IMG/VR virus record: IMGVR_UViG_3300036715_003906
Coordinates: 124,001-188,000 of that record
Length of the DNA: 64,000 nt
Strand: one strand, 5' to 3'
The position numbers were made by a program, and so were the translations under genes. Below are positions 34,201 to 60,716 of this stretch, one piece after another. Within the stretch, counting starts at the first letter, position 1. Each line of letters opens with the position of its first letter. The notes below the pieces were generated by a model that worked only from the letters and a program-made list of their open reading frames with translations, was not told the DNA's origin and made no database searches.

Positions 34201-34544
34201 CGATGGGGCTCGTTGTCGGGGACCTTCTCGTAGAGGTCTGGGTCGTCCCGGAGCGTGTCGGGGTGGACGCGGGGGACCTCGTCCTTGGTCTTGTTGCGGA
34301 CGCGGACCCACTCCGCCGCCAGACGCTCCGCCATGGAGCCCGCGACCTTCTTGCGGTTCAGGCTCATGTCGGGGTCCGTCTTGGTGTCCTTGTCCCCGTC
34401 CGTGTCGGGGTCCCGCTCGGGCCGAATGTGCTCCCGCTTCGCGTCGTCACGGGGAGGCTTGACCTTGGGCGCTGGGCGCACCAGCCGCTCGGCCTCCGCC
34501 TCTTCCCGCTCGTGAGTGTCCTTGGTGGCCCCGATGTCGCGCAC
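31284..34544 (-). CDS. Large charged low-complexity head-module protein (possibly 2-3 fused genes; internal starts 32015 and 31622)
   Basis: GGAGG RBS + GTG 34544; Lys/Glu/Pro-rich; internal AGGAG-ATG at 31622. Confidence 0.6.
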   Translation of the reverse strand: MRDIGATKDTHEREEAEAERLVRPAPKVKPPRDDAKREHIRPERDPDTDGDKDTKTDPDMSLNRKKVAGSMAERLAAEWVRVRNKTKDEVPRVHPDTLRDDPDLYEKVPDNEPHRDDGIRPPRKLPRVHKPHCHKDPLPHPKWPDPRPQPKAAPRPPMPPETPKTPEPEKQPKVKPPGWVRERRNLKAALVGRWLRQAAEEGEEDLVTVRRKEDGKVVRVKPDTLKETPSAYEPIDEDEEGDEGEEDLVTVRRKEDGKVVRIKPDTLKETPSAYEPIDEDEEGDEGEDEGPEDAPPEEPEKPSPKDDAKPDKPPSASPKELYERGEHIRNLLKGDPAMESRFKGLNDPTNPLRVISDKVPAGALLGGAKIQGIETVSDIIEALAVPKPPPEAKPKPKPEPEDEDAGGGDGKSPKGKPNRPAVTRPPATPEDKARAQRVLIERLGPHQARKLLKSGLHPHDAETVAAAFDVAKRREVRPSDLDDYVDKSKAFFQTDPDKVGPPSQGKDAKGVVKPYKELTPKEQGEAWQDHRNKVVAMSLAVRRQVFDSYKRMGAPKALAQAMVTARLGGEKGLADKVFSKAMADPDNGMSPGKAKHLFDNVKDPATREVAAAYLQGRSYQDALHTYLDPSSSKAFHERMPAGQIAGRLTEATGFLRGRDKELPEDVPKRNLGRLFRTRIYNRLAGMNAKKADKLLPYLDTLDAEDYRTDKKAWKKQHKGWTQETKAREKKRQKLKAEADREAEAWKAGDPAKRSKDPPLPFEERIRQAKLDKKDDPAEPPKPLKPPRYEWRPKSQAEAEKDSKDLFDDLVKSLGGEGKEPKTKTACLLLGRTLALSSCTPRVTMTRIDRTAVYWGVDPYPEDPSQPPYAYQGWEQARARDMGESDFQAILTAAKERLRSPPLSPVPEGMVPDARYRAALDLAIRETGGGRYSVGVHPTIYNTLLARLAQVRDPGTLQTLREASESSYPPVQEKTMKPSIRLRAFAQKFASDQPALAYDLIELADKFAEDEQAQQDQQGQGQQKQGGEMPPALKKHMEEKAEGKGDQDQGQDKQAYIALKTEIVKVAHENPAIRAALLPALKRIKQG
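33688..33944. repeat. 126-nt tandem duplication (42 aa, EEDLVTVRRKEDGKVVR(V/I)KPDTLKETPSAYEPIDEDEEGDEG)
   Basis: Two copies differing at one position that I could find (33761 vs 33887). Confidence 0.9.
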
Positions 34545-34568
34545 ACCTCCGGCGGGGGGATAGAAGGG

Positions 34569-37500
34569 TTAGGCGCGGCGGGACTGGGGCGGGGGAAAGG
34601 GGACCGCCTTTGGCCGGGGCTTCGTCGAGGCAAAGCGGTTGCTGTCCTCCCCCTCGGCCGGCGGGGGGGTCAAGGTGAGACCGAGGCTCGTGGCGATCTT
34701 CTCCTTGACGTCCGACCCCTCGGCGAGCATCCGGCCCACTTCACCGTAGATGGCCCGCGTCACCTCGTTGAAGGTGGCGTCGTTGACGGTGAACATATCC
34801 TTTTCGAGCTTCTGCCGGGTGTCGTGCGGGTCGATGTTGAACATCTCCAGGATGACGTCGATCGAGACCGACCCCTTCTGGTACAGGTTGAACAGCGCGT
34901 CGAACGTGTCCTGGCTGTCCCGGAGCGGCAGGCGGGTGAAGCTGAGGGACGGGTAGAGGACCACTTCCTCGCCCCACTCGTCGAGTTCGATGAAGCCCTT
35001 GCGCCGGGCCACGGGCTTGAACAGGTACTCCTCGACGTACTCCTGCAAGATCTCCCGCAGAAACAGGTAGCGCTGGTTGATCACTTCGAGCTTGAGCCGG
35101 TCGCCCGAGTAGAGGGTCTCGCCCGAGAGAAGGCTCTCGGTCACGCCCAGGCCGGTGCGCAGGTGGCGCTCCGTGATCTCGTACTCCGAGGACAGGTCGA
35201 GGAGCCTGTCGCGGCTCCCCATCTCCTCCCAGTGCAGCTCGTAGTTGACGATGATCGAGTAGTCGGGGTCGACGAGGGCGTAGTCCACCTGATCGCGAAG
35301 GGCCTCGACGTCGTTTTCGCTGAGGTCGTCGGCCCAGATGATCCGCTTCGGGGTCATCGCCCGGCTGGCGATCTGGGTCTGCGCCTGGCGGAGCTTCTCC
35401 CGGTAGTACAGGGTGCGAAGGCAGTTGGAAGTACGCGAAAGTCCAGCGAAAAACGAGTGGTCTTCGTGGACGTTGAGGCTGTAGACCGGCCCCTCGTGCA
35501 TGGCCGTCGAGACCGATTGCACCCGGTAGAAGAGCTTCCCCTCGTGCTCGACGTGCCGTGACCCCGAGCGCCCGTCCTTCCACTCGTCAGGATCTTGCCG
35601 CTTGGCAAGGAAACCCGACTCGAAGAACGTCTTGACGGAAGGACCATGCGTAAAGTGAACGGAGTGCAAGGGCTTCGCCCAAGCCCTCTCTCCGTTCGCC
35701 TGCCTGACCCAACGTTCCTTCGTAGGCTTCGTCTTGGAGACCGGGATGCCGAGGGACGTGCAGAGCAAGAAAATCTGATCCATAAGCACATGGTTCGTAC
35801 CGTTGAACCGGACGCAGATGCTCCCGTCTTTCTTGCGGACGACATCCCCATCGGAGTCACAGAAACCTCGAAGGAGACCGAGCAAGAACCCCTTGTTGGC
35901 GTCGAAGACCCACGCGGGCAGGTGTTTGTCCTCGCTCGTGTGCCCGAAATTTGCGGCCATCCAACGCACGAGAGCGTCCTGGTAGCCGTCCATGTGGACC
36001 CCAGCCCCAGCATGGCTCTCCGACCACACGACCTTGAGCACGTCGAGCATCGGCTTGATCTGCTCTTGGATCGCCTTAACGGACGCGGGCTCGTTGGGGC
36101 CGTAGGTGAACCCGAGCGTACCGTAGTCGAGCCCCTCGTGCTTCGTGATGTGCCCGTCCCCGAGCCAGAAACCGAGGAAGTACCCGAAACCTGCAACCAG
36201 CGGGAGCACCCGCATGGGGAAGGTCTTGGTGTGGGCGGCGCTCGTCGGGGCTTTCAAGCCGGACTTGTTGGGCGGGAAGTTGAGGGTCTTGTCCTTGGCG
36301 ACCGTCACCCCGTACCCGAGCGACACGAGTTGGGACCGGATCTCCTTGAGCGTGACCGGATGAAGGCCGAAGCGTTCGCAGACTTCGGCCGAACGCATCG
36401 CCACGGGCTCCGTGAGCGTCGATGCCCATTCGAGGATGACGTTGAGGTCGTTGGTGCGACCGACCTTTCGAGGGTCCGTCTGTTCCTTCTCATACCTGAC
36501 CGTGAACGAGTGCGTCGTCCGGTCCACGACCTCCCAGCGAAGGTCTGAGGTACCTCCAGAGCGACGGGCACGGTAGTCGGCCTCGACCCCGTGCATGAAC
36601 TCCGCGAGATCGACGCCCCCAACCAACGAACCAGAAAGCGGGACCTGCGCGACCTGAAGGTAATCCCCAGCCCGGATGTCCTCCGCAGGAAGCTCGACCA
36701 CGGACCCGTCGCGAAGCACGGGGTACTTGTGGTCCTTCGTGCAGCCCACTGGCGGCTCGATCTTGGCGACGTGAAGAAGCGCGATCTCCTCCGCCACGGG
36801 ACGGACACCGACCTCGAACTCACGCCACGCCCCCGTGTGCGAAAGCACTCGATCCGTGTCGGGATCGAGATCCTCGATGTGGACTTGCCGAACCACCCCG
36901 TCCCGTTTCACGAGAACCGGGGTGCCTGCGATGTGGCAGCGGTCGAGGATGGACTGGCCCAGCTCGTCCCCCGCACCCTTCCGGGCCGAGAGCATGTGGA
37001 CGAAGGACCCCTCGTCCGGGTCGTCGCCGAGGGGGATCAGGTGCCCGTTCTCGATGTAGTCCCGGATCTCGGCAGGGATCTCCTCGACCATCTCCGACGC
37101 AATGGGGTCGCCCATCTTCGCCTGCTGGATGAGGGCCCGATCCCGGTCCGAGGGGATCAGCTCGACCCGCATCTTGTCCGAGAAGTCGAAGGTCGTGACC
37201 TTGACCTGGTCGATCGGGAAAATGATGATCCGGTCCCACCCCTTGTAGTGCTTCCGGTAGTAGGCGTCCTCCTCCTCCTCGCGGGTGTCCTTCTCCACCC
37301 TCTCGACGTCGTCGACCTCGCGGGCCCCGTGCTCGTCAACCACGCTGCGGCGGACCTTCTTGGGCTCGTAGCCGACGTCGTCAGGAAGCGGGACCTGGTG
37401 GTCCTCGGCGAAGATGGCGACGTTGCCGTCCAGCCAGTAGTGGCGGACGATGGTCGCCAGCCGCTGGAACAGCTTGACCTTCTTCGACATCTTCTGGAAG

Positions 37501-37943
37501 AAGGAGAGGATGTACTTGCCGTACTGCTCGGGGCTCGTGAAGCCCTCGGGGTGCGAGATGGGCTTCGGGGCCGCCAGTCGCACCTTCGACAACGGCAGCT
37601 CCGTGTGCAGGTCGATCGACTGCGCGACGATGGGCTCGGAGTTGTAGAAGTGCCGGTAGATCTCCCGCTTCTCGCGGAGAGACTGCGGCAGCTCCAGGAA
37701 GTCGGTCGAGAGCTGGGGGGAGAAGAAGGACCCGTTCTGGGCCAGACTCGTGTAGCCGCCCATGCCCCCGGCGTAGTTCGCCGTGCGGGTGTTCCCTGCC
37801 AGACCCTCGCGGCGAGCCCGACGCTCCAGGGGGGTCAGGGGCATCATCTGCACAGGGGACGCCACCCGGGGGTGGTTCCGACGCATGTGGGGGTCGAGGG
37901 CAGCCTGAACGGGCCGGGCCGAGGTGTAAGGGCGTGGGGGCAT
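34569..37943 (-). CDS. Portal protein with an intein
   Basis: Downstream of TerL; R...RHFY...PIV...IDL..ELPLS and YW..GN motifs; C-terminal L.F..L.L.D. GAGGAG RBS. Confidence 0.85.
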   Translation of the reverse strand: MPPRPYTSARPVQAALDPHMRRNHPRVASPVQMMPLTPLERRARREGLAGNTRTANYAGGMGGYTSLAQNGSFFSPQLSTDFLELPQSLREKREIYRHFYNSEPIVAQSIDLHTELPLSKVRLAAPKPISHPEGFTSPEQYGKYILSFFQKMSKKVKLFQRLATIVRHYWLDGNVAIFAEDHQVPLPDDVGYEPKKVRRSVVDEHGAREVDDVERVEKDTREEEEDAYYRKHYKGWDRIIIFPIDQVKVTTFDFSDKMRVELIPSDRDRALIQQAKMGDPIASEMVEEIPAEIRDYIENGHLIPLGDDPDEGSFVHMLSARKGAGDELGQSILDRCHIAGTPVLVKRDGVVRQVHIEDLDPDTDRVLSHTGAWREFEVGVRPVAEEIALLHVAKIEPPVGCTKDHKYPVLRDGSVVELPAEDIRAGDYLQVAQVPLSGSLVGGVDLAEFMHGVEADYRARRSGGTSDLRWEVVDRTTHSFTVRYEKEQTDPRKVGRTNDLNVILEWASTLTEPVAMRSAEVCERFGLHPVTLKEIRSQLVSLGYGVTVAKDKTLNFPPNKSGLKAPTSAAHTKTFPMRVLPLVAGFGYFLGFWLGDGHITKHEGLDYGTLGFTYGPNEPASVKAIQEQIKPMLDVLKVVWSESHAGAGVHMDGYQDALVRWMAANFGHTSEDKHLPAWVFDANKGFLLGLLRGFCDSDGDVVRKKDGSICVRFNGTNHVLMDQIFLLCTSLGIPVSKTKPTKERWVRQANGERAWAKPLHSVHFTHGPSVKTFFESGFLAKRQDPDEWKDGRSGSRHVEHEGKLFYRVQSVSTAMHEGPVYSLNVHEDHSFFAGLSRTSNCLRTLYYREKLRQAQTQIASRAMTPKRIIWADDLSENDVEALRDQVDYALVDPDYSIIVNYELHWEEMGSRDRLLDLSSEYEITERHLRTGLGVTESLLSGETLYSGDRLKLEVINQRYLFLREILQEYVEEYLFKPVARRKGFIELDEWGEEVVLYPSLSFTRLPLRDSQDTFDALFNLYQKGSVSIDVILEMFNIDPHDTRQKLEKDMFTVNDATFNEVTRAIYGEVGRMLAEGSDVKEKIATSLGLTLTPPPAEGEDSNRFASTKPRPKAVPFPPPQSRRA
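35424..36938 (-). mobile_element. Intein (505 aa) with LAGLIDADG homing endonuclease
   Basis: CHIAGTPV (A), CTKDHKY (B), FLGFWLGDG and LLRGFCDSDG (C, E), VYSLNVHEDHSF (F), TSN/C (G). Confidence 0.92.
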
Positions 37944-52972: not shown

Positions 52973-53513
52973 GGGGCACCTCGGGGAGCAGCTTGGACGG
53001 GTCGAAGGGCGGGAGCTTGGGCTCCAGGGGCGGGGGGAAGAAGCGGAGCCACCACCGGCGCCACCAGGGGATGCGCGCCTCGGGCAAGGCGGCCCCGTCC
53101 CCGAGGGCCCAGACAAGGTGAGCCACGTTGGGCATCTCGGCCTCCAGCCACCCGGGCTCCTGGACCTGGGCCACGAAGATCTGGGCGGCGAGCAGGGGCG
53201 TCTCCGTGGTCTCGAAGACCGGGCACCGCTGGGCGTCGAGGGGCTCGTCGCAGATGTCCCCGCTCCACTCTTCCGGATCGTCCGACCCGTACATGCACAG
53301 GCCCACGTCCTGGACGACCGGGAGGTGGCGCCGGTCGAGGCGGTTGAATCCCGGGTTGCTCTCCCCGCCCACCTGCCGGCGGGGGTCCAGGGGCTGCCGG
53401 TGGTTGTGGACGCACCGGTGAGGGAGCCGGCGCGTGGACGCCTCCACCCTCCTGTCCAGCTCCTCCTTGAGCAAGACGTCAATGCGCTCCCGGATCTCCT
53501 CGTCGCTCCTCAT
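52953..53513 (-). CDS. Hypothetical Cys-containing protein
   Basis: ATGA-coupled start 53513; C.HN...C.YG......CD....A..C. Confidence 0.55.
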   Translation of the reverse strand: MRSDEEIRERIDVLLKEELDRRVEASTRRLPHRCVHNHRQPLDPRRQVGGESNPGFNRLDRRHLPVVQDVGLCMYGSDDPEEWSGDICDEPLDAQRCPVFETTETPLLAAQIFVAQVQEPGWLEAEMPNVAHLVWALGDGAALPEARIPWWRRWWLRFFPPPLEPKLPPFDPSKLLPEVPRGGQAP

Positions 53514-54181
53514 GAGGCACCCCGTAGCCTGCGGAGCGCCAAATGCCAAGCTCCGTCCTCGGTCCCCTCGGTCGACGCCGCGTAGGCGTGGTCCGTGTGG
53601 TCGAGGAGCGCCTGCTTGTGGGTGACGAGCAGGATCATCACCCCCGTGCTCTTCGCCAGGTGCTGGAGAAACCGGCCCGTCGCGTCCAGGTACTCATCGC
53701 TCACCGCCCCGAGGGTCTCGTCGAGGAGGAGCAGCGGGAACCGCCCGAGCCGCAGCAGGGTGAGCAGGCGCAGGGTGAGCGAGGCCAGGCTGCACGGCCC
53801 TCCCCCGAAGGCTTGCAAGGGCTCGTCCCGGATCACGATGCCGCCCTCCTCCCCTTGCCGGAAGAAGAAGTCGATGCTGAGCCGCCCGCGCTTCTCCCCG
53901 ACCTCGGCCTCGAAGGCCAGGCGCTGGTCAGGGAAAATGGTGGTCAGCCCCTCGCTGACCAGCCCCTCGATCACCTTCACCTGATCCAAGACCAGCCGGT
54001 CGAGGAGCAGGCGATACAGCTCCCCCACCTTGGTGAGCACCTCGACCCGGTGGTCAAGGGCCCGGACTTCCTCCCGGCTCTCGCGGAGCTGGCGGACCGT
54101 CTGGTCTCGCGCGGCCCCCAATCTAGCCGCACGCTGCCGCAAAACGGACAGACGAGAGGTGCGGTCCCAGGCGGTGGTCAT
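53510..54181 (-). CDS. SbcC/Rad50-type ABC ATPase, C-terminal half
   Basis: Coiled coil, then signature-like FGGG, Walker B LLLLDE and H-loop LVTH; no Walker A. ATGA-coupled start 54181. Confidence 0.85.
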   Translation of the reverse strand: MTTAWDRTSRLSVLRQRAARLGAARDQTVRQLRESREEVRALDHRVEVLTKVGELYRLLLDRLVLDQVKVIEGLVSEGLTTIFPDQRLAFEAEVGEKRGRLSIDFFFRQGEEGGIVIRDEPLQAFGGGPCSLASLTLRLLTLLRLGRFPLLLLDETLGAVSDEYLDATGRFLQHLAKSTGVMILLVTHKQALLDHTDHAYAASTEGTEDGAWHLALRRLRGAS

Positions 54182-55416
54182 TCCATCGACGGAAGAAATC
54201 GTGTCACTCGGCATCGAGAAGCCCCTTCGGGCAAGATCTCTACACCGGAACCCCCGACAATCTTACCCTCGGGGGACAGCACGAACTCGTCCACGGTCCG
54301 CAGCATCACCAGGCCCCGCGGCCGGGCCTCGCTCGGGGCTACCATGTAGGCCCGCACTTCCAGCTCGTTCCCCCGAATCCCCGTGAAGAGTTCGAGCAGG
54401 TGGTCGAGGTTGAACGACGCCGACCAGGCCGCGTGGTCCGTGCCCATCTCGACGGGGACCGGGAAGGAGGTGACCTTCTCCGTCCCCCCCGCGGCCCCGA
54501 AAGTCATCTGCTTGCCCTCGGCGTCGTACTGGACCCGAACCTTGGTCCGCTTGTCCATCTCGCTGCGGACGTACTTGAGGGCGTGCAGGACGGGGGACGC
54601 CGCCACCTTCGCCACCCACACGTCCTGGTCGAGACTGTAGTAGCTGAACGCCTCGTGCTTCTTCGCCGAGTGGGCCCAGCCGAGCACGCGCCCCTGCTCA
54701 TCGGAGAGGAAGGTCATCGAGGCGCCGTCCCGTACCGTGACCGTCTGGCCCGCTTTGCCGAGGAAGGCCAGGACCATGGACAGGTGCTGGCTGTGGACGT
54801 GGAGACCCTTGTCGTAGAGCGCGTCCGACCGGAAGAACATGGCCAGCGTCCCGTTGGCGGCGTAGACGTACCCGTTGGCCTTCTCGCCCGGGGTGACCTT
54901 GCCGTCGAAGAGCTGTACCCCACGGAGCGCCTCGTTGACGATCTTGTCCCCCGGCTCGGGGAGGAAGGCCCGCGCCTGGGAGAACGCTTCCCGGAGGAGC
55001 GCCGCAGGGAAGGTCCGCTCCCCCACGGCCGCGTCAAGGTCGCGGTCCAGCGGCGCCAGGAGACGGGGGTCGAAGGTCGACCGCTCCGCCCCCGCCCCCG
55101 TGCCGGTCGAGTAGGCGACCCGGTGGGCCTCCCCCTCGGCCGTCGCCGTGAGCGTCACCATCTCGTCGCCGAGGTAGCCGAAGGAGGAGGTGTGCTTCGC
55201 CGGGTAGATGAAGCTCCCCTCCCCCTCCACATCGGTGATGGGCACCGACGCCCGGGCCGCGTGGGTGTTGTCCCGCGAGTAGACGTGAAGCGTCTCCCCC
55301 CGGACCACGAAGAGATACCCCGCGCCCCCCTGCCCCACCGGGCGAGGAGGAACGATGGCCACCGACGCGAGAGCCCCCACAAGGGCCGCCGCCTGCACCA
55401 CGAACTTGATCATCAT
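54178..55416 (-). CDS. DNA polymerase III beta sliding clamp-like protein
   Basis: ~410 aa, three repeated beta-alpha domains; C-terminal SFNLDHLLE.F..I.....V pattern; next to DnaX and primase. Confidence 0.7.
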   Translation of the reverse strand: MMIKFVVQAAALVGALASVAIVPPRPVGQGGAGYLFVVRGETLHVYSRDNTHAARASVPITDVEGEGSFIYPAKHTSSFGYLGDEMVTLTATAEGEAHRVAYSTGTGAGAERSTFDPRLLAPLDRDLDAAVGERTFPAALLREAFSQARAFLPEPGDKIVNEALRGVQLFDGKVTPGEKANGYVYAANGTLAMFFRSDALYDKGLHVHSQHLSMVLAFLGKAGQTVTVRDGASMTFLSDEQGRVLGWAHSAKKHEAFSYYSLDQDVWVAKVAASPVLHALKYVRSEMDKRTKVRVQYDAEGKQMTFGAAGGTEKVTSFPVPVEMGTDHAAWSASFNLDHLLELFTGIRGNELEVRAYMVAPSEARPRGLVMLRTVDEFVLSPEGKIVGGSGVEILPEGASRCRVTRFLPSME

Positions 55417-55418
55417 GC

Positions 55419-55691
55419 TCAGCTTTCCTGGAAGAACGCGAGCGCCGCCTCGGCCCCCGTGAGGTCCTTCTCGTAGGTATCGAGAAGAGACACCAGTTCC
55501 CCCTTCGCCTTGTCCCGCTCCGCGATCAACGTCCGCGGGTCCAGGCCCTCCTTGCGGATCTCGTCGAGCAGCTCTTCAAGCTGCTTCTTCTTTGCCGCGA
55601 GCTGGCCGTTCACCGACGCCTTCGCCTCCCGGACGCTGTCCGTCCGTCGGGTCACGTCATCCACTCGCCGCCTCAGATCATCGTCCGTCAT
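55419..55691 (-). CDS. Small coiled-coil protein
   Basis: 90 aa, heptad-rich. Confidence 0.6.
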   Translation of the reverse strand: MTDDDLRRRVDDVTRRTDSVREAKASVNGQLAAKKKQLEELLDEIRKEGLDPRTLIAERDKAKGELVSLLDTYEKDLTGAEAALAFFQES

Positions 55692-56593
55692 GGTTCCTCG
55701 TTCCCAAGTGCCAGCATCATGCTCGCGTCGTCCATGTCAGGCGACGGGCCGAGGAGGCCACGACCCTCCGGGCACACCGCCGCGTAGGAACAGAGCTTAC
55801 ACCCCCAGCGATCGGGTTTGGCAGCAAAGTGCTCCATGAGCAGGGGGAGCTGCCCCCGGGACGTCAGCCGCTCCATGCTGTTCCAGTGGACCGTAATCGC
55901 GTCCATCGTCTGGAGGACCTCGTCCCACAGCTCCCGGATCTTCTCGGGGTCCACGTCAATCCAGTCCATCGCCGCCTCGGGCTCCGACCGCCAGAACACG
56001 AAGCCCAGCCGGTCAGGGAGCCGCCCGTGGTGCTTCTCGTACAGCATCGCGTACCAGAGGAGCTGGACAGGGTCGACGTACTTCTCCCGCCACTTGCTCC
56101 CCTTGCCTTCGAGGAGGAGGTTGTCGCTGTCCGGAGCGATGCGGGTCAGGATGAAGTCGGCTCGCCCCCCGATCATGTGCTCCCGGTACGCAATGTCGAG
56201 CTTCACCTCGGCCTGGGCATCCTTGCCGAGCAGCCGGTAGCGGCGAATGATCCCCACCCCCCGGGGGATCGCCTCCAGGATGTCCGCGAGGAGCGTCTCC
56301 CGGCTCTTGTAGTTCGATCGGGGGTCGGTGAACGTCACGCTCCCCGACCGCTCCTCCCGCGCGATGGCCTGGTCGAGAACCCCCGGCGCCCGCGCCTGCA
56401 TCTGGGCCACAATCCCGTGGGTGAGCCAGAGCTTCTCGGCGTAAAAGATCTCGAACAAGAGCCCGACCACCGTGCCGAACAGGCTGTTGACCTTGTTCTC
56501 CCTCTCCGGATTCTCCGTCTTGGCCAGATACCGGTGGTAATACGCCCGAGGACAGCTCTTGTAGAGCTTGTAGCCGCTGTAGGACAGGTACAT
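55688..56593 (-). CDS. PD-(D/E)XK nuclease (RecB/AddB-like)
   Basis: LSYSGYKLYKSCP..Y, GRADF, LEGK, QL.WYA, C-terminal C.LC.YA.VC. Confidence 0.8.
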   Translation of the reverse strand: MYLSYSGYKLYKSCPRAYYHRYLAKTENPERENKVNSLFGTVVGLLFEIFYAEKLWLTHGIVAQMQARAPGVLDQAIAREERSGSVTFTDPRSNYKSRETLLADILEAIPRGVGIIRRYRLLGKDAQAEVKLDIAYREHMIGGRADFILTRIAPDSDNLLLEGKGSKWREKYVDPVQLLWYAMLYEKHHGRLPDRLGFVFWRSEPEAAMDWIDVDPEKIRELWDEVLQTMDAITVHWNSMERLTSRGQLPLLMEHFAAKPDRWGCKLCSYAAVCPEGRGLLGPSPDMDDASMMLALGNEEP

Positions 56594-56596
56594 TTT

Positions 56597-57577
56597 TCAT
56601 CCGATCCCAGCACCTGCACGTTCGAGGTACTCCTTCGCTACGTCCCGCACCTCTGCCGCGAAGTCAAGCTGACCGAGGGTCGTGAGAATGTTCTTGCTGG
56701 GGTCGGCCGCCATGGTGGCCTGCAAGGTCGCGACGAAGGACTCGATGGCCTGCGCCCCATCGTCCGCCTTCTGCTTCTTCTCCATGTCGAAGACGTCGCC
56801 CGGGGGAGCCACGATGAGGGGCAGGGAGACCACGGCGATCCCCGACGGCGTGACCTCGAGGAGCGCCCCTCGCGGGACCCGTTCCAGGTTCTCCCGGATG
56901 AGCGCCCCCCGGGAGAGGGCCCCCTGGTTGACGAAGCTCTTGCCCCCCAGTTCCACGATCCCCTGGTCCTTGTGCCAGTGCCCGAAGCACCACACGTCCG
57001 GGCCGTCCGGGGTGACGAGGTCCGCATACCGGAAGACGGGCTCGTTGAAGAACTCCTCGACAGCCGGCGGGGGGGCCTGACCGGCGAGCTGGTGGACGAT
57101 GGCCACCAGGAAGTCGTCCCCCGGCTTCCTCTGGATGGCCTTCAGCTCCTCGACCGTGCGGAAGGGGCTGTACGGCATCCCCACCACGCGCACCCGGAGC
57201 GGGCCGTCCTCGAAGACGGTCTCCCGCAGGTGCTCGAACACGCCCGCCCCGTACAGCACCCCGAGCGGCTGGTTCGGGATGGTGTCGAGGTTGTTGTAGG
57301 CCATGTCGTGGTTGCCCTCGACGCACCAGACCGGGCAGGGGTAGGCCGCGTGCAGCCGGGCCGTCTTCTCCACCAGGTGGTGCGGGTTCCGCGTCGCCGC
57401 CTTCTGGTGGAAGTAGTCACCCCCGTCGAGGACCGCCTGGGCCTCATGCAGCCGGGCGAACTCCCCGATCTGCCGCAGGTTGTCCCAGATCTCCGCCGGG
57501 TAGTCCCCCTTCCAGCTCGCAGGGCTCTTGTCGGAAGCGTGGACGTCAGTCCGGTGGATGAGGGCGATTCGGGGCAT
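56597..57577 (-). CDS. SbcD/Mre11-like metallophosphoesterase
   Basis: TDVH, DGGDYFH, GNHD, GHWH motifs; start MPRIALIH 57577. Confidence 0.85.
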   Translation of the reverse strand: MPRIALIHRTDVHASDKSPASWKGDYPAEIWDNLRQIGEFARLHEAQAVLDGGDYFHQKAATRNPHHLVEKTARLHAAYPCPVWCVEGNHDMAYNNLDTIPNQPLGVLYGAGVFEHLRETVFEDGPLRVRVVGMPYSPFRTVEELKAIQRKPGDDFLVAIVHQLAGQAPPPAVEEFFNEPVFRYADLVTPDGPDVWCFGHWHKDQGIVELGGKSFVNQGALSRGALIRENLERVPRGALLEVTPSGIAVVSLPLIVAPPGDVFDMEKKQKADDGAQAIESFVATLQATMAADPSKNILTTLGQLDFAAEVRDVAKEYLERAGAGIG

Positions 57578-58784
57578 GGGTTCCGTGGGGCCCGTGCAAA
57601 GGACGGGCGCACTTCGAACATACACCGAGCGCGTCCGCCTCCGCCTGAACCTTCACCCCCTCCGCCTCCAGCCGGACCATGTCGGCCTCCAGGGCCCGCA
57701 CTTCGGCCACCAGGCCCCCGAGCTTGGACCCGAGGTCACGGAGCCGTCTGTAGCGCCCCCAGGCCCCCTGGATGGGGGTGGCGTCGAGGGCGGGGAGACT
57801 CGCCATCCGGTCGAGCCGCTGAAAGGACGCCCGGTGCCCGAGCATCCGGGTCACCCACCCCGAGATCCGCTGGTAGCGCCCCCACGCATCCCGGAGGGGA
57901 GCCCGGTCCGGGACCTGGTTCATCTCGGCCGGCAGGAGCCTCTTGACCGCCCGGAGCGAGGCGTTCAGCCGCTGATCGAGGTGCCCGATCCGGTCGAACC
58001 GAGCCCACGCCGCCCGGAGGGGCCGGGAGTCCATGTCAGGCACCCGCTCGACGGGAAGGAGCCGACCCAGATCCCGCTCGGTCCGGGTCAGGCCGTCCGC
58101 CCACCGATCCAGCCGCTCGATCTGCCCCCGCTTGCGGGCCAGGGTCTCCCCCACCTGCCCGAGACGCTCCACCTGAGCGAGCGCCCCGTCGAGGCCCACA
58201 AAGCCCGCCTCACGGGCTTCGAGCTTGAGGACGTCACTCGCCCGCACCTTCCGGGTCGCAGCCGCTTCCCGCTTGTCCTTCTCGGCGAGACGGATCGCCA
58301 CGTTGATCCGGTCGAGGTTGGCCACGTCGGCGAGCACGTCCGCCACGACCCCCCCAGTCTGGTCGAGGAGGAAGATCGGCTTCGTCTGGGGCGCCGCCTG
58401 GAGCAGCACGGACCCCGTGCCCACCGTGACCGGGGAGAAGGCCGGGGTGAGAAAGTCCGGCGTGCCTCGGTCCGCCCGGTCGTAGATCTGCCCGTTGTAG
58501 GTATAGCGATTGATCGCGTCACCCTTCTCCCAGAGCAGGTCGAAACCCTCCCGGCGGAGGTGAACGGAAGCGAAGCACTTGCAGCTCTTCGCCGACTTCA
58601 CCCGCCGGGGGCAGGTGGGGGCATGGCGGACGAAGTTGGTCCCGCTGGCGCCGGAGAGCGCCGCCGTGATCGCCCGGACCACCGCGCTCTTGCCGATGTT
58701 CGAGCGACCCACGAGGGCCGTGTAGCCGTCGAGCCGCAACCGGATGTGTTTGATGCTCTGGAAGTTGCGGATCTCGACGTCCAT
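57546..58784 (-). CDS. SbcC/Rad50-type ABC ATPase, N-terminal half ending in a CxxC zinc hook
   Basis: I.NFQSI, Walker A GRSNIGKS, Q-loop, coiled coil, CSKC near the C-terminus; no Walker B. Confidence 0.85.
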   Translation of the reverse strand: MDVEIRNFQSIKHIRLRLDGYTALVGRSNIGKSAVVRAITAALSGASGTNFVRHAPTCPRRVKSAKSCKCFASVHLRREGFDLLWEKGDAINRYTYNGQIYDRADRGTPDFLTPAFSPVTVGTGSVLLQAAPQTKPIFLLDQTGGVVADVLADVANLDRINVAIRLAEKDKREAAATRKVRASDVLKLEAREAGFVGLDGALAQVERLGQVGETLARKRGQIERLDRWADGLTRTERDLGRLLPVERVPDMDSRPLRAAWARFDRIGHLDQRLNASLRAVKRLLPAEMNQVPDRAPLRDAWGRYQRISGWVTRMLGHRASFQRLDRMASLPALDATPIQGAWGRYRRLRDLGSKLGGLVAEVRALEADMVRLEAEGVKVQAEADALGVCSKCARPLHGPHGTHAPNRPHPPD

Positions 58785-58787
58785 GAC

Positions 58788-60053
58788 TCAGTCTCCTTCG
58801 GGGCTCTCGCTACCCAGGTCCGTTTCGTCGAGGACCTCTTCCGCCACCTCGATCAGCTCCTGCTCTTCGACACCGGTGTCGGCCATGTCGTCGAGGGGGA
58901 CGGGCATGGCACCCGACAGGATAGCCTTTTGGACCTCCCCGATCAGGTTCGCGTAAACCTGGGGGTTCTGGATCATGTAGGCCCGGAACTTGTCGCGGCC
59001 GATGATCTTGACCTGGTCGAACTCGTAGCTGGACCCGCCGCGCTTGACGATCTTGTTGGCCACAGCGGCCTCAATCACAGAGAAGATGTCGTCGACCCCC
59101 GTGCCGTAGCGGATAAAGATCTCGCCCTCCTGCCCGGCCTTCCCATCGAGCTTGTCCTTGATCACCTTGACCTTGGTCACGATACCGAAGGGGGTATCGC
59201 GCTTCTTGTTGGTGATCGGGTCGAGGCGCGAGTCCTTCTCCGTCTTGACCCGCTGGATGTGGAGCCGGACGGAGCAGTAGAACTTGAGGGCCTTGCCACC
59301 GGTGGAGCTGGCGGCCGGCGGGGCATAGGAGGGGCCGGTCGAGATGGTGGCCCGCTCCTGGTTCAAGAGGATGAGCGCCGTCCCGGGGGCATCCTCGTCG
59401 CGCTCCTCGCCTCTCTTCGGGTACATCGCGAGCCAGTTGGCCACCTTGGGTAGCGTCTGGGCCAGCTTGCTCGCGACGACACCGACCTTGATCGCGTCGT
59501 CGATCGACTTGGCCATCTCGGCCGCGGGGACCATGGCCGCGACGGAGTCGACGACCACGACGTCCACCCCGGCGCAGATCATGACGAAGACCATCTTGAA
59601 CCCCTGCTCCAGCGTGTCGGGGGCGAAGATGTCGAAGGTCTCGTCGAACTTGACGCCGATGGCCTTGGCGTACCGGTAGTCGAGGGCGTGCTCGAAATCG
59701 AGGAAGGCCGCCGACCCGCCCGCGTTCTGGACGGTCTTGACCGCCTCCAGGGCGAGGGTCGTCTTGCCGCTCGCCTCCGGCCCGTAGATCTCCGTGATCC
59801 GGCGACGGGGGTAGCCCGGGCACACGGGCCTTCCGTCCGGACCAATCGTGCCCCCGACCAGGTTGTTGACGATGATGCTGCCCGACCCGATGAACGGGTG
59901 CTGCCCCGTCCCGACTTGGACAGGCTTCTGCCCATCGCACGCCTTGGCGATGCTGCTCCGGGCCAGAGCCAGCTTCTTGGCCGACTCGGCTTTCACCTTG
60001 GCGTAGGCCGTGGCCGCCGTATCCTTGCTGTCCTTGCTCTTCTTCGTCGCCAT
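58788..60053 (-). CDS. recA: RecA-family recombinase
   Basis: EIYGPEASGKTTLAL, FLDFEHALD, PDT.EQ, VVDSVAAMVP, NQ.R, GGKALKFY.SVRL. Confidence 0.93.
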   Translation of the reverse strand: MATKKSKDSKDTAATAYAKVKAESAKKLALARSSIAKACDGQKPVQVGTGQHPFIGSGSIIVNNLVGGTIGPDGRPVCPGYPRRRITEIYGPEASGKTTLALEAVKTVQNAGGSAAFLDFEHALDYRYAKAIGVKFDETFDIFAPDTLEQGFKMVFVMICAGVDVVVVDSVAAMVPAAEMAKSIDDAIKVGVVASKLAQTLPKVANWLAMYPKRGEERDEDAPGTALILLNQERATISTGPSYAPPAASSTGGKALKFYCSVRLHIQRVKTEKDSRLDPITNKKRDTPFGIVTKVKVIKDKLDGKAGQEGEIFIRYGTGVDDIFSVIEAAVANKIVKRGGSSYEFDQVKIIGRDKFRAYMIQNPQVYANLIGEVQKAILSGAMPVPLDDMADTGVEEQELIEVAEEVLDETDLGSESPEGD

Positions 60054-60071: not shown

Positions 60072-60716
60072 TCAGGGAAGTTGTGAAAATCGAAAAAACC
60101 GCTGGTTTTCCTTGTACACCGCGCCCTGCATGACCGTCTGACCCGCCTTCGCCCCCCGCTGAAAGGTGTGGACCTTCACGAAGGCTTGCGTCTCGGCCGG
60201 GGTCAGCTCCCGCTCCGTGATCACCCCGGCCAAAAACTCCCAGAACCGGGCCGCCGAGCGGGCGACAAGGTAGGCGTCCGCCTCGTTGTGGTTCAGGCGC
60301 CCCGTGAGCCCCGTGTCGAAGCGCACGGTCTCCACCATGTCGCTCTTGTGCATCGGACCAGGGCGGGCCTTCGGGTCCCCCTTGGCGAGCATCTTGACCG
60401 ACGTCGGGTCAAAGAAGACAACGTCCTTGCGGTGACGCCGGATAGCCTCGTTCACGTACAGGAAGAGGCCGTAGAGGCCCTCACTCCAGAGGGCCCCGAA
60501 CGGTGGGCTTTCCACCCCCACCGCTTCCACCTCGGGGTGCGCGGCGATGATCTGGGATACGCTCTCCCGAAGGAAGACGTACCGGTCAATGAAGATCTCG
60601 CTCGCCCTGGTAACGAAAATCCCCCGGGCCACGATCCGCGCTACCCCCTCGGCCTGGCTGTTGTGAATGCACCAACCGAACCCAGTGAGAGACGGATCGA
60701 GCCCGAGGGTAATCAT
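60072..60716 (-). CDS. ruvC: RuvC-like Holliday junction resolvase
   Basis: LGLDPSLTGFGW, VGVE, P..VK, HNEADA. Confidence 0.8.
   Translation of the reverse strand: MITLGLDPSLTGFGWCIHNSQAEGVARIVARGIFVTRASEIFIDRYVFLRESVSQIIAAHPEVEAVGVESPPFGALWSEGLYGLFLYVNEAIRRHRKDVVFFDPTSVKMLAKGDPKARPGPMHKSDMVETVRFDTGLTGRLNHNEADAYLVARSAARFWEFLAGVITERELTPAETQAFVKVHTFQRGAKAGQTVMQGAVYKENQRFFRFSQLP

What the first reader, a model, noticed from the sequence alone, without database searches (positions are those of the whole stretch)
53510..58784. SbcC/Rad50 split into two genes at the zinc hook, with four genes in between
Seen: the N-half (Walker A, Q-loop, coil, terminal CSKC) and the C-half (coil, signature, Walker B, H-loop) are separated by SbcD, a PD-(D/E)XK nuclease, a 90-aa coiled-coil protein and the clamp. 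No intein motifs are present at the break. Known: Rad50/SbcC/gp46 is normally one chain folding back at the CxxC hook. Inference: non-covalent heterodimeric ATPase, with the 90-aa protein possibly supplying missing coil.
Basis: partly seen in the sequence, partly recalled or inferred. Interest (0 to 1): 0.6.

Follow-up and report, generated by a model that had tools for sequence, protein, structure and literature searches.

The report
Two-gene SbcC/Rad50 in huge phages
This phage encodes its Rad50-like DNA-break ATPase (SbcC) as two separate proteins, cut just after the zinc hook; the same split, usually with a small helical partner protein, is conserved in a large and so far undescribed phage family that includes cultured Bacillus phages.

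Summary
On the minus strand of a 251-kb phage record, one tight operon reads: RuvC, RecA/UvsX, SbcC N-half (412 aa), SbcD, Cas4-like PD-(D/E)XK nuclease, a 90-aa two-helix protein (s90), a beta-clamp, SbcC C-half (234 aa).

- **N-half:** Walker A, Q-loop, and CSKC 20 residues from its end.
- **C-half:** an FGGGP signature, Walker B and the H-loop.
- **Not an accident:** about 35 related contigs keep the same gene order. An exhaustive profile search finds 1389 cluster representatives of the stand-alone C-half at E<=1e-10. The best 150 are all 88-324 aa.
- **Other layouts:** distant phages have the same split arranged differently. They include phBC6A51, 0305phi8-36, Tunturi_5 and Magritte.
- **Binding:** a complex model supports N+C binding (ipSAE 0.71; best control 0.00). 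It shows a Rad50-like head and a short antiparallel coil.
- **Asymmetry:** N-half residues ~220-388 have no C-half partner. They include three tandem 41-aa repeats (~244-375), and repeat number varies between relatives.
- **s90:** relatives lie between the two halves in two Bacillus phages, so it is probably a third subunit. Its role is untested.

I judge this a new variant of a known kind.

The parts
57546..58784 (-). SbcC/Rad50 N-half, 412 aa. It holds ATPase lobe I, the ascending helices and a C-terminal CxxC hook.
   Evidence: ORF. Pfam AAA_15/AAA_23/SMC_N match the first ~55 residues and phrog_16465 gives E 1.6e-9. The AlphaFold2 N lobe has Pyrococcus furiosus Rad50 N-terminal chains as best Foldseek hits, and VIA gives Z 8-10.6 to SMC, RecF and Rad50 heads. 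More than 330 stand-alone homologues of 344-489 aa exist.
58686..58709 (-). Walker A / P-loop GRSNIGKS (N-half residues 26-33)
   Evidence: G26, N29, G31 and K32 are invariant and the other positions nearly so in 33 homologues. 118 of 120 homologues match the pattern. In the complex model, residues 20-24 pack against C-half strands 194-198.
58575..58625 (-). Invariant His-Cys-Cys-Cys cluster (H54, C58, C68, C70) inserted in lobe I; putative extra metal site
   Evidence: Invariant in alignment A1. The pattern RH..C..CxC is present in 120 of 120 homologues. The LR745208 relative has the RH and one Cys but not the CxC pair. Metal binding is an inference.
57660..58055 (-). Three tandem 41-aa helical repeats (N-half residues ~244-375), with the motif P[LI]xxAWxR[FY]xR[IL] at residues 255, 296 and 337
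   Evidence: Self-alignment z-scores are 6.3-9.9 against shuffles. AlphaFold2 places helices at 254-288, 294-328 and 336-386. Homologues gain or lose whole units.
57609..57620 (-). CSKC, the zinc-hook-type CxxC (N-half residues 389-392), 20 residues before the stop codon
   Evidence: G387, C389 and C392 are invariant. 118 of 120 homologues have CxxC (102 of them CPTC) 7-24 residues from the C-terminus. Most distant N-halves end in CPVCG, CGKCG, CPLC or CPTC; Magritte gp155 has none. The phBC6A51 N-half gives a weak Rad50_zn_hook Pfam hit, E 0.009.
56597..57577 (-). SbcD/Mre11-type nuclease, 326 aa; its start overlaps the N-half 3' end by 32 nt
   Evidence: Metallophos E 9e-12 and phrog_100 'SbcD-like' E 2e-10. 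The phosphoesterase motifs DVH, GGD, GNHD, VHQ and GHWH are visible. The start was read.
55688..56593 (-). Cas4/RecB-like PD-(D/E)XK exonuclease, 301 aa, with a four-cysteine pattern (C14 and CxxCx5C near the C-terminus)
   Evidence: PDDEXK_1 E 3e-17, above the cut-off. phrog_69 and phrog_1218 'exonuclease' match. The cysteines were read. An Fe-S cluster is inferred from Cas4/AddB knowledge.
55419..55691 (-). s90: a 90-aa helix-loop-helix protein (helices 3-47 and 55-89, loop with invariant G49 and P52); candidate third subunit
   Evidence: Alignment A5. AlphaFold2 gives pLDDT 86. A homologue lies at the same position in LR745208 (hhalign 96%, E 2e-9). The only significant genome-wide matches in phBC6A51 (BC1854, E 6e-5; strongest match shown) and 0305phi8-36 (gp7, E 1.7e-4; the only match) lie between the N- and C-halves.
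54178..55416 (-). Beta sliding clamp (DnaN-like), 412 aa
   Evidence: phrog_947 'processivity factor' E 2.7e-7 on the N-terminal part only. A profile of 16 homologues hits solved beta-clamps 1vpk (E 1e-9) and 8dt6 (E 1.6e-5, profile positions 3-360).
53510..54214 (-). SbcC/Rad50 C-half, 234 aa: a short descending helix (about residues 15-82) and ATPase lobe II; its start overlaps the clamp gene by 37 nt
   Evidence: phrog_15167 E 2e-13. Its best solved matches are Rad50 C-terminal chains, E 0.003. The profile hits SMC heads at E 2.7e-5. More than 400 stand-alone homologues of 191-243 aa exist. The overlap was read and is 37 nt in 30 of 35 loci.
53795..53809 (-). Signature-motif equivalent FGGGP (C-half residues 136-140), with Gly in place of the canonical Ser
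   Evidence: G137-G139 are invariant. The motif aligns with LSGGE of SMC. xFGGGP occurs in 116 of 120 homologues and a GGG core in 98 of 149 distant representatives.
53717..53734 (-). Walker B LLLLDE (C-half residues 161-166), followed by the D-loop
   Evidence: D165 and E166 are invariant. In the complex model, residue 163 contacts the N-half P-loop helix (36, 39, 40) and the Q-loop (129, 130).
53615..53620 (-). H-loop H199-K200
   Evidence: H199 is at least 90% conserved and K200 is invariant. The position aligns with the SMC H-loop.
58788..60053 (-). RecA/UvsX-type recombinase, 421 aa; upstream neighbour in the same gene row
   Evidence: RecA Pfam E 7e-47 and phrog_97 E 1e-52.
60072..60716 (-). 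RuvC-like Holliday-junction resolvase, 214 aa; first gene of the conserved row
   Evidence: phrog_159 E 5.6e-15. Conserved at this position in the related loci.

Best explanation
The phage makes its SbcC/Rad50 ATPase from two polypeptides.

**N-half (412 aa).** It supplies lobe I (Walker A, Q-loop), the whole ascending arm, and the CxxC hook at its C-terminal end.

**C-half (234 aa).** It supplies a short descending helix and lobe II (signature-like FGGGP, Walker B, D-loop, H-loop).

**Assembly (modelled).**
- The two chains associate without a covalent link. The beta-sheet of the head runs across both chains.
- N-half residues ~147-219 form an antiparallel coiled coil with C-half residues ~15-82.

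**Inferred by analogy with Rad50/SbcC.**
- Two N+C units bind ATP between Walker A of one unit and the signature motif of the other.
- They sit on a dimer of SbcD, which is encoded between the halves.
- The complex processes DNA ends or hairpins for the neighbouring RecA, RuvC and Cas4-like nuclease during phage recombination-dependent replication.

**Distal arm (inferred).**
- N-half residues ~220-388 have no partner from the C-half. They include three tandem 41-aa repeats (residues ~244-375).
- This stretch probably forms a single-chain arm that pairs with the same arm of the second N-half, is joined at the tip by the CxxC pair through zinc, or does both.
- The conserved 90-aa helix-loop-helix protein is probably an accessory subunit that binds this arm or the coil root.

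**Origin (inferred).** The split is old. A cut just after the hook was followed by loss of most of the descending helix, and then by free duplication and loss of repeats in the now unpaired arm.
For: **Complementary halves.**
- Motifs divide cleanly between the two proteins.
- SMC_N matches the record only at the N-half (model positions 3-56) and the C-half (136-212).
- phrog_77, the full-length SbcC model, finds nothing else in the record.

**Complex model.**
- ipSAE was 0.70, 0.72 and 0.71 in three runs; the best of 3 controls scored 0.00.
- That mark was reached by 58 of 80 solved complexes and 2 of 110 mismatched pairs. The counts hold only roughly, because my own alignments were used.
- Runs agree in at least 95% of contacts and the partner pLDDT is at least 78.
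- Contacts have the Rad50 head geometry, for example N 20-24 with C 194-198 and N 129-130 with C 163, plus a coil N 147-219 / C 15-82.
- Because Rad50 heads are solved, the pass may reflect likeness rather than binding of this pair.

**Fold.** The best Foldseek hits of the N lobe are Pyrococcus furiosus Rad50 N-terminal chains.

**Conservation.**
- The order RuvC-RecA-N-SbcD-PDDEXK-s90-clamp-C recurs in about 35 contigs.
- There are more than 400 stand-alone C-halves and more than 330 stand-alone N-halves.
- The exhaustive profile search gives 3361 representatives at E<=1e-3 and 1389 at E<=1e-10. The best 150 are all 88-324 aa.

**Hook.** CxxC lies 7-24 residues from the C-terminus in 118 of 120 N-halves and in all distant relatives examined except Magritte gp155.

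**Link to SbcD.**
- SbcD is adjacent or nearby in the window clade, LR745208, L043-L048, phBC6A51 and Tunturi_5.
- SbcD is fused to the N-half in 0305phi8-36 gp8.

**Arm asymmetry.**
- The C-half stays at 191-243 aa while the N-half varies from 344 to 489 aa by whole repeat units.

**s90.**

**Precedent.** Solved Pyrococcus Rad50 catalytic domains are deposited as separate N and C chains: 1f2t chains A and B have 145 and 148 residues.
Against: - No experiment exists. No RNA run holds the locus, so expression and stoichiometry are unknown.
- Sequence similarity of each half to Rad50 is weak (E 0.003 to 0.5 for single sequences). Structural Z-scores do not separate Rad50 from SMC or RecF heads.
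- The signature serine is replaced by glycine across the family, so ATP-driven head engagement may differ.
- The AlphaFold2 model of the arm has pTM 0.35, so its path is unknown.
- The C-half gene is coupled to the clamp gene. In Tunturi_5 it lies near the clamp and about 108 kb from the N-half. A clamp-related role cannot be excluded.
- s90 binding was not modelled, because only one complex job was allowed.
- The record is only 53% complete by CheckV, so another partner could be encoded elsewhere.
Confidence: 0.8

Rival explanations
1. The halves work in different complexes. The C-half acts with the sliding clamp, for example as a clamp-associated ATPase. The N-half acts with SbcD as a hook-bearing scaffold.
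For: A 37-nt overlap of the clamp and C-half genes is kept in 30 of 35 loci. The clamp directly precedes the C-half in LR745208. In Tunturi_5 the C-half (gp14) lies 3 kb from the clamp (gp9) and about 108 kb from the N-half, which stays with UvsX and SbcD.
Against: - Neither half has a complete nucleotide site.
- The N+C model passes its controls.
- In phBC6A51, 0305phi8-36 and L043-L048 the C-half lies next to the N-half or SbcD with no clamp beside it.
- No other SMC-like half exists in the 251-kb record.
Confidence: 0.08
2. The two ORFs are the remains of a broken sbcC gene (pseudogene or assembly error) and have no function.
For: Splitting of a normally single gene is what a disruption by inserted DNA would look like. 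LR745208 and L024 carry extra inserted genes, including an HNH endonuclease, between the N-half and SbcD.
Against: - Both ORFs are intact, have coding GC3, and keep all catalytic residues invariant across homologues 40-60% identical.
- The architecture recurs in hundreds of contigs, in cultured phages, and in different gene orders.
- Independent assemblies are collinear.
Confidence: 0.01
3. The halves are joined after transcription or translation into one standard SbcC chain, by a split intein, RNA splicing or recoding.
For: Inteins do occur in this module: SbcD of three relatives carries a LAGLIDADG intein. In L045 the N-half and C-half are adjacent and in the same frame.
Against: - No intein family matches either half.
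- Only 7-24 residues follow the hook, too few for an N-intein.
- The C-half N-terminus has no His-Asn plus nucleophile junction.
- In L045 two TAA stops separate the ORFs.
- In other phages the C-half comes before the N-half or lies on the opposite strand about 108 kb away.
- No credible joined DNA form was seen: the listed joints have 21-33 matching letters on their shorter side.
Confidence: 0.02
4. The N+C heterodimer is real, but the distal arm folds back on itself into a compact helical-repeat domain. In that case the CxxC (with nearby histidines in many homologues) is an intramolecular metal site, not an intermolecular hook.
For: The arm is made of 35-aa helices separated by proline-containing breaks with a 41-aa period. 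Many N-halves have one to three histidines shortly after the CxxC.
Against: - Repeat number changes by single units in homologues (n-1, n, n+1, n+2). In a zigzag bundle this would flip the position of the C-terminal motif.
- Several homologues have no histidine after the CxxC.
- The motif matches the classic CPxC hook, and the phBC6A51 relative gives a weak Rad50_zn_hook hit.
- VIA aligns the arm only to long extended helices.
Confidence: 0.15

Closest known systems
Bacterial SbcCD, phage T4 gp46/gp47, archaeal and eukaryotic Mre11-Rad50
   Same: SMC-like ABC ATPase head with Walker A and Q-loop at the N-terminal end and signature, Walker B and H-loop at the C-terminal end. A coiled coil leaves the head, a CxxC hook is present, and the partner is a calcineurin-like nuclease with all five phosphoesterase motifs. 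The genes sit beside recombination genes.
   Different: - There are two polypeptides instead of one, cut 7-24 residues after the hook.
- The descending helix is reduced to about 65-70 residues.
- The arm is built of 41-aa tandem repeats whose number varies.
- The signature Ser is replaced by Gly.
- This clade has an extra His/Cys3 cluster in lobe I.
- A conserved 90-aa companion protein is present.
Laboratory two-chain Rad50 catalytic domains (Pyrococcus furiosus Rad50cd, PDB 1F2T, 1F2U, 1II8, 3QKR)
   Same: N-terminal and C-terminal segments expressed as separate chains assemble into an ATPase head. They are listed as separate chains of about 145-199 residues. The window's N lobe has these N chains among its best structural matches.
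   Different: Those are engineered truncations that lack the arm and the hook. Here the split is natural, the N chain keeps the whole arm and hook, and only the C chain is short.
Mre11-Rad50 fusion proteins (Mimivirus R555 type; Yoshida, Claverie and Ogata 2011, PMC3175470), including Bacillus phage 0305phi8-36 gp8
   Same: 0305phi8-36 gp8 (769 aa) is SbcD fused to an N-half of the same kind, ending in CPTC. [quoted passage not shown]
   Different: The missing segment is in fact encoded two genes downstream as gp5 (236 aa), a member of the C-half family. The paper did not report this. In the window, SbcD is not fused.
PHROG families phrog_16465 ('exonuclease') and phrog_15167 ('ATPase')
   Same: They are the N-half and C-half families, respectively.
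   Different: They are catalogued as unrelated families with generic names. Nothing in the annotations seen links them as two parts of one enzyme.

Membership tests
Rad50/SbcC (SMC-like ABC ATPase with zinc hook) | N-terminal Walker A (P-loop) and Q-loop in lobe I | tested here: met
   GRSNIGKS at residues 26-33. Q129 and Q133 are invariant. 118 of 120 homologues keep the P-loop pattern. The fold matches Rad50, SMC and RecF lobe I.
Rad50/SbcC (SMC-like ABC ATPase with zinc hook) | Signature motif LSGG(Q/E) in lobe II | tested here: inconclusive
   FGGGP sits at the aligned position. The glycines are invariant, but the serine is Gly throughout the family. Function of this variant is unknown.
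Rad50/SbcC (SMC-like ABC ATPase with zinc hook) | Walker B, D-loop and H-loop in lobe II | tested here: met
   LLLLDE at 161-166 and H199-K200 are conserved and align to SMC and Rad50 heads.
Rad50/SbcC (SMC-like ABC ATPase with zinc hook) | Long intramolecular antiparallel coiled coil between the two lobes | tested here: not met
   The chains are separate. In the model, only N 147-219 and C 15-82 pair. N residues ~220-388 have no descending partner, and their length varies with no compensating change in the C-half.
Rad50/SbcC (SMC-like ABC ATPase with zinc hook) | CxxC zinc hook at the end of the ascending helix | tested here: met
   CSKC here. CxxC is present in 118 of 120 homologues, mostly CPTC. 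The relative phBC6A51 gives a weak Rad50_zn_hook hit. Zinc binding itself cannot be tested with these tools.
Rad50/SbcC (SMC-like ABC ATPase with zinc hook) | Encoded with an Mre11/SbcD nuclease partner | tested here: met
   SbcD lies directly downstream of the N-half. It is nearby in distant split systems and fused to the N-half in 0305phi8-36.
Rad50/SbcC (SMC-like ABC ATPase with zinc hook) | ATP-dependent head dimerisation and DNA-stimulated ATPase and nuclease activity | not testable with these tools
   Needs biochemistry.
Split-intein (protein trans-splicing) gene pair | N-intein of about 100 aa at the end of the first product, and a C-intein ending in His-Asn followed by Cys/Ser/Thr at the start of the second | tested here: not met
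   No intein or Hint family matches. The tail after the hook is 7-24 aa. The C-half N-terminus has no such junction.
Bacterial beta sliding clamp (DnaN) | Sequence-profile similarity over the three-domain clamp | tested here: met
   A profile of 16 homologues hits 1vpk (E 1e-9) and 8dt6 (E 1.6e-5, profile positions 3-360). phrog_947 also matches. No Pfam hit for the single sequence.
Cas4/RecB-type PD-(D/E)XK nuclease | PDDEXK_1 domain above the Pfam cut-off, and a four-cysteine pattern | tested here: met
   63.7 bits against a cut-off of 22. C14 and CxxCx5C near the C-terminus were read. The Fe-S cluster was not tested.

The most novel reading that the evidence does not exclude
This is a three-subunit 'open-arm' Rad50: the N-half, the C-half and the 90-aa helix-loop-helix protein. 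Most of the arm is not an intramolecular antiparallel coiled coil. It is a single chain of 41-aa repeats that pairs in parallel with the arm of the second N-half, closes at a zinc hook, and is bound by the small protein. If so, neither covalent continuity through the hook nor a two-stranded arm is needed for hook-to-head communication in Mre11-Rad50 machines.
Probability: 0.3. Interest if true: 0.8.

Novelty: new variant of a known kind. Interest (0 to 1): 0.65.

Why it matters
- **A natural test case.** Rad50/SbcC is described as one chain that folds back at its zinc hook. How the long arm and hook talk to the ATPase head is still debated. This family has the chain cut at the hook, most of the descending strand deleted, and arm length free to vary.
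- **Scale.** The variant is conserved in a family with at least 1389 cluster representatives at E<=1e-10.
- **Tractable hosts.** It occurs in phBC6A51 of Bacillus cereus, Bacillus phage 0305phi8-36, Microbacterium phage Magritte and Tunturiibacter phage Tunturi_5.
- **Annotation.** The two halves are currently named 'exonuclease', 'ATPase', 'chromosome segregation ATPase' or 'hypothetical protein'.
- **An old puzzle.** It explains the 2011 remark that the 0305phi8-36 Mre11-Rad50 fusion lacks one ATPase segment.
- **A new candidate subunit.** The small s90 protein is a candidate third component.

Tried and rejected
- **The search for related loci with the single C-half:** found nothing. The alignment was needed.
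- **blastn of the region against phages:** gave only RecA fragments.
- **Literature:** exact-phrase searches for a split SbcC or Rad50 returned no paper. Broader searches and two reviews mention no natural split.
- **Context of three distant C-half representatives:** only 1-4 kb contigs, uninformative.
- **s90:** no informative match in Pfam (H-NS N-terminal domain below cut-off), PDB sequences (generic coiled coils), the ESM Atlas (unnamed phage clusters) or Foldseek. No convincing s90 relative was found in Tunturi_5, Magritte or the L045 genome. Weak adjacent small ORFs were not counted as evidence.
- **Arm geometry:** VIA-align and Foldseek could not tell how the arm is arranged, and the model's pTM is 0.35.
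- **Read joints:** the joints have 21-33 matching letters on their shorter side and recur in unrelated contigs. I treated them as noise, not as a joined form.
- **Frameshift fusion of clamp and C-half:** considered because of the 37-nt overlap. A start codon with an upstream GAAGGGG and a conserved C-half N-terminus explain it more simply.
- **Not modelled:** the single complex job went to N+C, so s90, SbcD and N-N pairings were left out.

Full report
**Source and setting.** The window is bases 124001-188000 of a 251,474-base IMG/VR virus record. CheckV rates it 53% complete. GC content is about 68%. Nearly all genes lie on the minus strand and have GC3 of 0.82-0.96. Near-identical DNA occurs in microbial-mat, sediment and freshwater or lake metagenomes from six studies.

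**Observation.** One search gives a tight minus-strand row:

| Gene | Coordinates | Size |
|---|---|---|
| RuvC-like resolvase | 60072-60716 | 214 aa |
| RecA/UvsX | 58788-60053 | 421 aa |
| SbcC N-half | 57546-58784 | 412 aa |
| SbcD | 56597-57577 | 326 aa |
| PD-(D/E)XK nuclease | 55688-56593 | 301 aa |
| s90 | 55419-55691 | 90 aa |
| clamp | 54178-55416 | 412 aa |
| SbcC C-half | 53510-54214 | 234 aa |

- The SbcD start was read.
- Family scans agree with these names. A profile of 16 homologues of the clamp-like protein hits solved beta-clamps.
- The N-half has Walker A at residues 26-33, invariant Q129 and Q133, and CSKC at 389-392. Twenty residues follow the CSKC.
- The C-half has FGGGP at the signature position, Walker B at 161-166 and the H-loop at 199-200.
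- No intein family matches either half.
- Neighbouring genes touch or overlap: N-half/SbcD by 32 nt, nuclease/s90 by 4 nt, and clamp/C-half by 37 nt. The row looks like one translationally coupled operon.

**Are the halves partners?**
- In the whole record, the SMC_N model matches only these two genes. The matches cover model positions 3-56 and 136-212, the two ends of the model.
- A full-length SbcC model finds nothing else.
- The complex prediction for N+C gave ipSAE 0.70, 0.72 and 0.71; the best of three controls scored 0.00. That mark was reached by 58 of 80 solved complexes and 2 of 110 mismatched pairs. These counts hold only roughly because my own alignments were used. Runs agree in at least 95% of contacts and partner pLDDT is at least 78.
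- The contacts are those of a Rad50 head. The strand before the P-loop (N 20-24) packs on the C-half strands around the H-loop (194-198). The Q-loop and the P-loop helix touch Walker B residue 163.
- N 147-219 runs antiparallel to C 15-82.
- Rad50 heads are solved structures, so the pass shows the likeness and supports binding but does not prove it.
- The AlphaFold2 model of the N-half (pLDDT 77.7, pTM 0.35) has Pyrococcus Rad50 N-terminal chains as best Foldseek hits. VIA gives Z 8-10.6 to SMC, RecF and Rad50 heads alike.
- The Rad50/SbcC label therefore rests on the head fold together with the hook and the SbcD partner.

**How general is the split?**
- The word-index search found 414 C-half relatives and 336 N-half relatives. 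The best 120 of each are 191-243 aa and 344-489 aa. Many lie on contigs of 200-620 kb.
- Two contigs looked up directly and 35 IMG/VR loci share the window's gene order at 33-58% identity.
- I ran the exhaustive profile search because the claim rests on the absence of unsplit close relatives. It found 3361 cluster representatives at E<=1e-3 and 1389 at E<=1e-10. The best 150, down to E about 1e-25, are all 88-324 aa. None is a full-length SbcC.

More distant systems keep the split but arrange it differently:

| Phage or locus | Layout |
|---|---|
| LR745208 (485 kb) | N, extra genes including an HNH endonuclease, SbcD, nuclease, s90, clamp, C |
| L045 (complete 135-kb phage) | SbcD, small ORF, N, two TAA stops, C |
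| L043 and L046-L048 | SbcD, small ORF, C; then (in L043 and L048) one or two genes and N. In L046/L047 the N-half was not seen in the DNA fetched |
| Tunturi_5 | RuvC, UvsX, N (gp181), three small genes, SbcD; C (gp14) about 108 kb away near the clamp |
| Magritte | N (gp155, no CxxC) and C (gp2) tens of kb apart |
| phBC6A51 (Bacillus prophage) | N (BC1852), BC1853, BC1854, C (BC1855), BC1856, SbcD |
| 0305phi8-36 (Bacillus phage) | gp8 (SbcD fused to N), gp7, gp6, gp5 (C) |

- Apart from Magritte gp155, every distant N-half I examined ends with a CxxC a few residues before the stop.
- In the window's clade, 118 of 120 N-halves have a CxxC 7-24 residues from the end.

**The unequal arms.**
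- The C-half contributes only about 65-70 helical residues.
- N-half residues ~220-388 lie beyond them. AlphaFold2 predicts helices at 198-247, 254-288, 294-328 and 336-386, separated by short breaks.
- The motif P[LI]xxAWxR[FY]xR[IL] recurs at residues 255, 296 and 337, an exact 41-residue period. Self-alignment z-scores are 6-10.
- Homologues differ by whole units. Length classes are about 362-376, 399-415, 424, 452 and 485-489 aa.
- C-half length (191-243 aa) and s90 length (89-97 aa) do not follow these changes.
- A canonical antiparallel arm would need matched insertions in both strands, so the distal arm cannot pair with the C-half.
- I infer an arm that pairs with the identical arm of the second N-half and is closed by the CxxC pair. 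This is not shown. The fold-back alternative is listed as a rival.

**The 90-aa protein.**
- It is a conserved helix-loop-helix with helices 3-47 and 55-89. The loop has invariant G49 and P52.
- LR745208 has a homologue at the same position (hhalign probability 96%).
- An unbiased six-frame search of whole phage genomes with its profile returned BC1854 in phBC6A51 (E 6e-5; the strongest match shown) and gp7 in 0305phi8-36 (E 1.7e-4; the only match). Both genes lie between the N- and C-halves (alignments).
- Scores are modest (about 20 bits) and coiled-coil proteins attract spurious matches. The positional agreement is what counts.
- No convincing relative was found in Tunturi_5, Magritte or the L045 genome.
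- I conclude that it is probably a subunit or cofactor of the split enzyme. Its constant length argues against a simple replacement of the missing strand.

**Rivals.**
- A pseudogene or assembly artefact is excluded by conservation, by intact motifs, and by collinear contigs from other samples. One sample carries a strain about 4-6% diverged with no indels.
- Post-transcriptional or post-translational joining is excluded by the lack of intein features, by two stop codons in the adjacent layout, and by layouts with reversed order or opposite strands.
- A separate clamp-linked role for the C-half is the only rival with real support, from the conserved 37-nt overlap and the Tunturi_5 layout. It does not explain how half an ATPase site would work.

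**Comparison with what is known.**
- The enzyme works like SbcCD or gp46/47. It fails one defining structural feature of Rad50/SbcC, the single chain with a long intramolecular coiled coil.
- The closest precedents are engineered two-chain Rad50 catalytic domains and the Mre11-Rad50 fusions described in 2011.
- That paper noted that the 0305phi8-36 fusion lacks one P-loop NTPase segment. The segment is gp5, two genes downstream.
- PHROGs holds the two halves as separate families with generic names.
- I found no paper describing a natural split. The library lacks most subscription journals, so prior mention cannot be excluded.

**Limits and compliance.**
- All evidence is computational. There are no RNA data.
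- The s90, SbcD and N-N interactions were not modelled, because only one complex job was allowed.

Noticed in passing
L011:5455-7554, L028:5446-7539, L038:5114-7498 (relatives, not the window): SbcD in three related phages carries an in-frame insertion of about 370 aa. It begins with Cys and ends in His-Asn followed by Cys, and it has LAGLIDADG-type blocks. It looks like an intein, placed exactly at the catalytic GHWH motif (GPDVW|CFGHWH). The window's SbcD has no insertion.
   Followed up: partly
window 58575-58625 (N-half residues 54-70): An invariant His-Cys-Cys-Cys cluster (RH..C..CxC) is inserted in ATPase lobe I of all 120 close N-half homologues. It may be an extra zinc site. The LR745208 relative has the RH and one Cys but not the CxC pair.
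   Followed up: partly
window 54178-54214: The C-half start codon lies 37 nt inside the end of the clamp gene. Exactly this overlap is kept in 30 of 35 related loci, which suggests translational coupling of clamp and C-half.
   Followed up: partly
window 53795-53809 (C-half residues 136-140): The ABC signature motif is FGGGP, with Gly where Rad50 and SMC have the ATP-contacting Ser. A GGG core is typical of the whole split family, including the Bacillus phages (RGGG).
   Followed up: partly
L061:2582-4891 (Bacillus phage 0305phi8-36 gp8): gp8 is a natural fusion of SbcD to the SbcC N-half and ends in CPTC. The separate C-half is gp5, two genes downstream. This resolves a remark in PMC3175470 that one ATPase segment was not observed.
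   Followed up: yes
L024:2503-5202 and L004:1657-4481: Some relatives have 2.7-2.8 kb of extra genes between the N-half and SbcD. In LR745208 these include an HNH endonuclease and a putative metallopeptidase. The junction seems to tolerate mobile insertions.
   Followed up: no
L006:9477-10226 (620-kb phage contig): A Cas12f1-like/TnpB-type domain protein (249 aa) lies shortly downstream of the C-half in a 620-kb relative.
   Followed up: no
window 55688-56593: The PD-(D/E)XK nuclease has the Cas4/AddB-style cysteine pattern (one N-terminal Cys plus CxxCx5C near the C-terminus). This suggests an iron-sulfur cluster.
   Followed up: no
window 1-64000: Almost every gene of the 64-kb window is on the minus strand. 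They include very large ORFs (1086 and 1124 aa at 31284-37943, 921 aa at 27328-30093) that were not examined.
   Followed up: no
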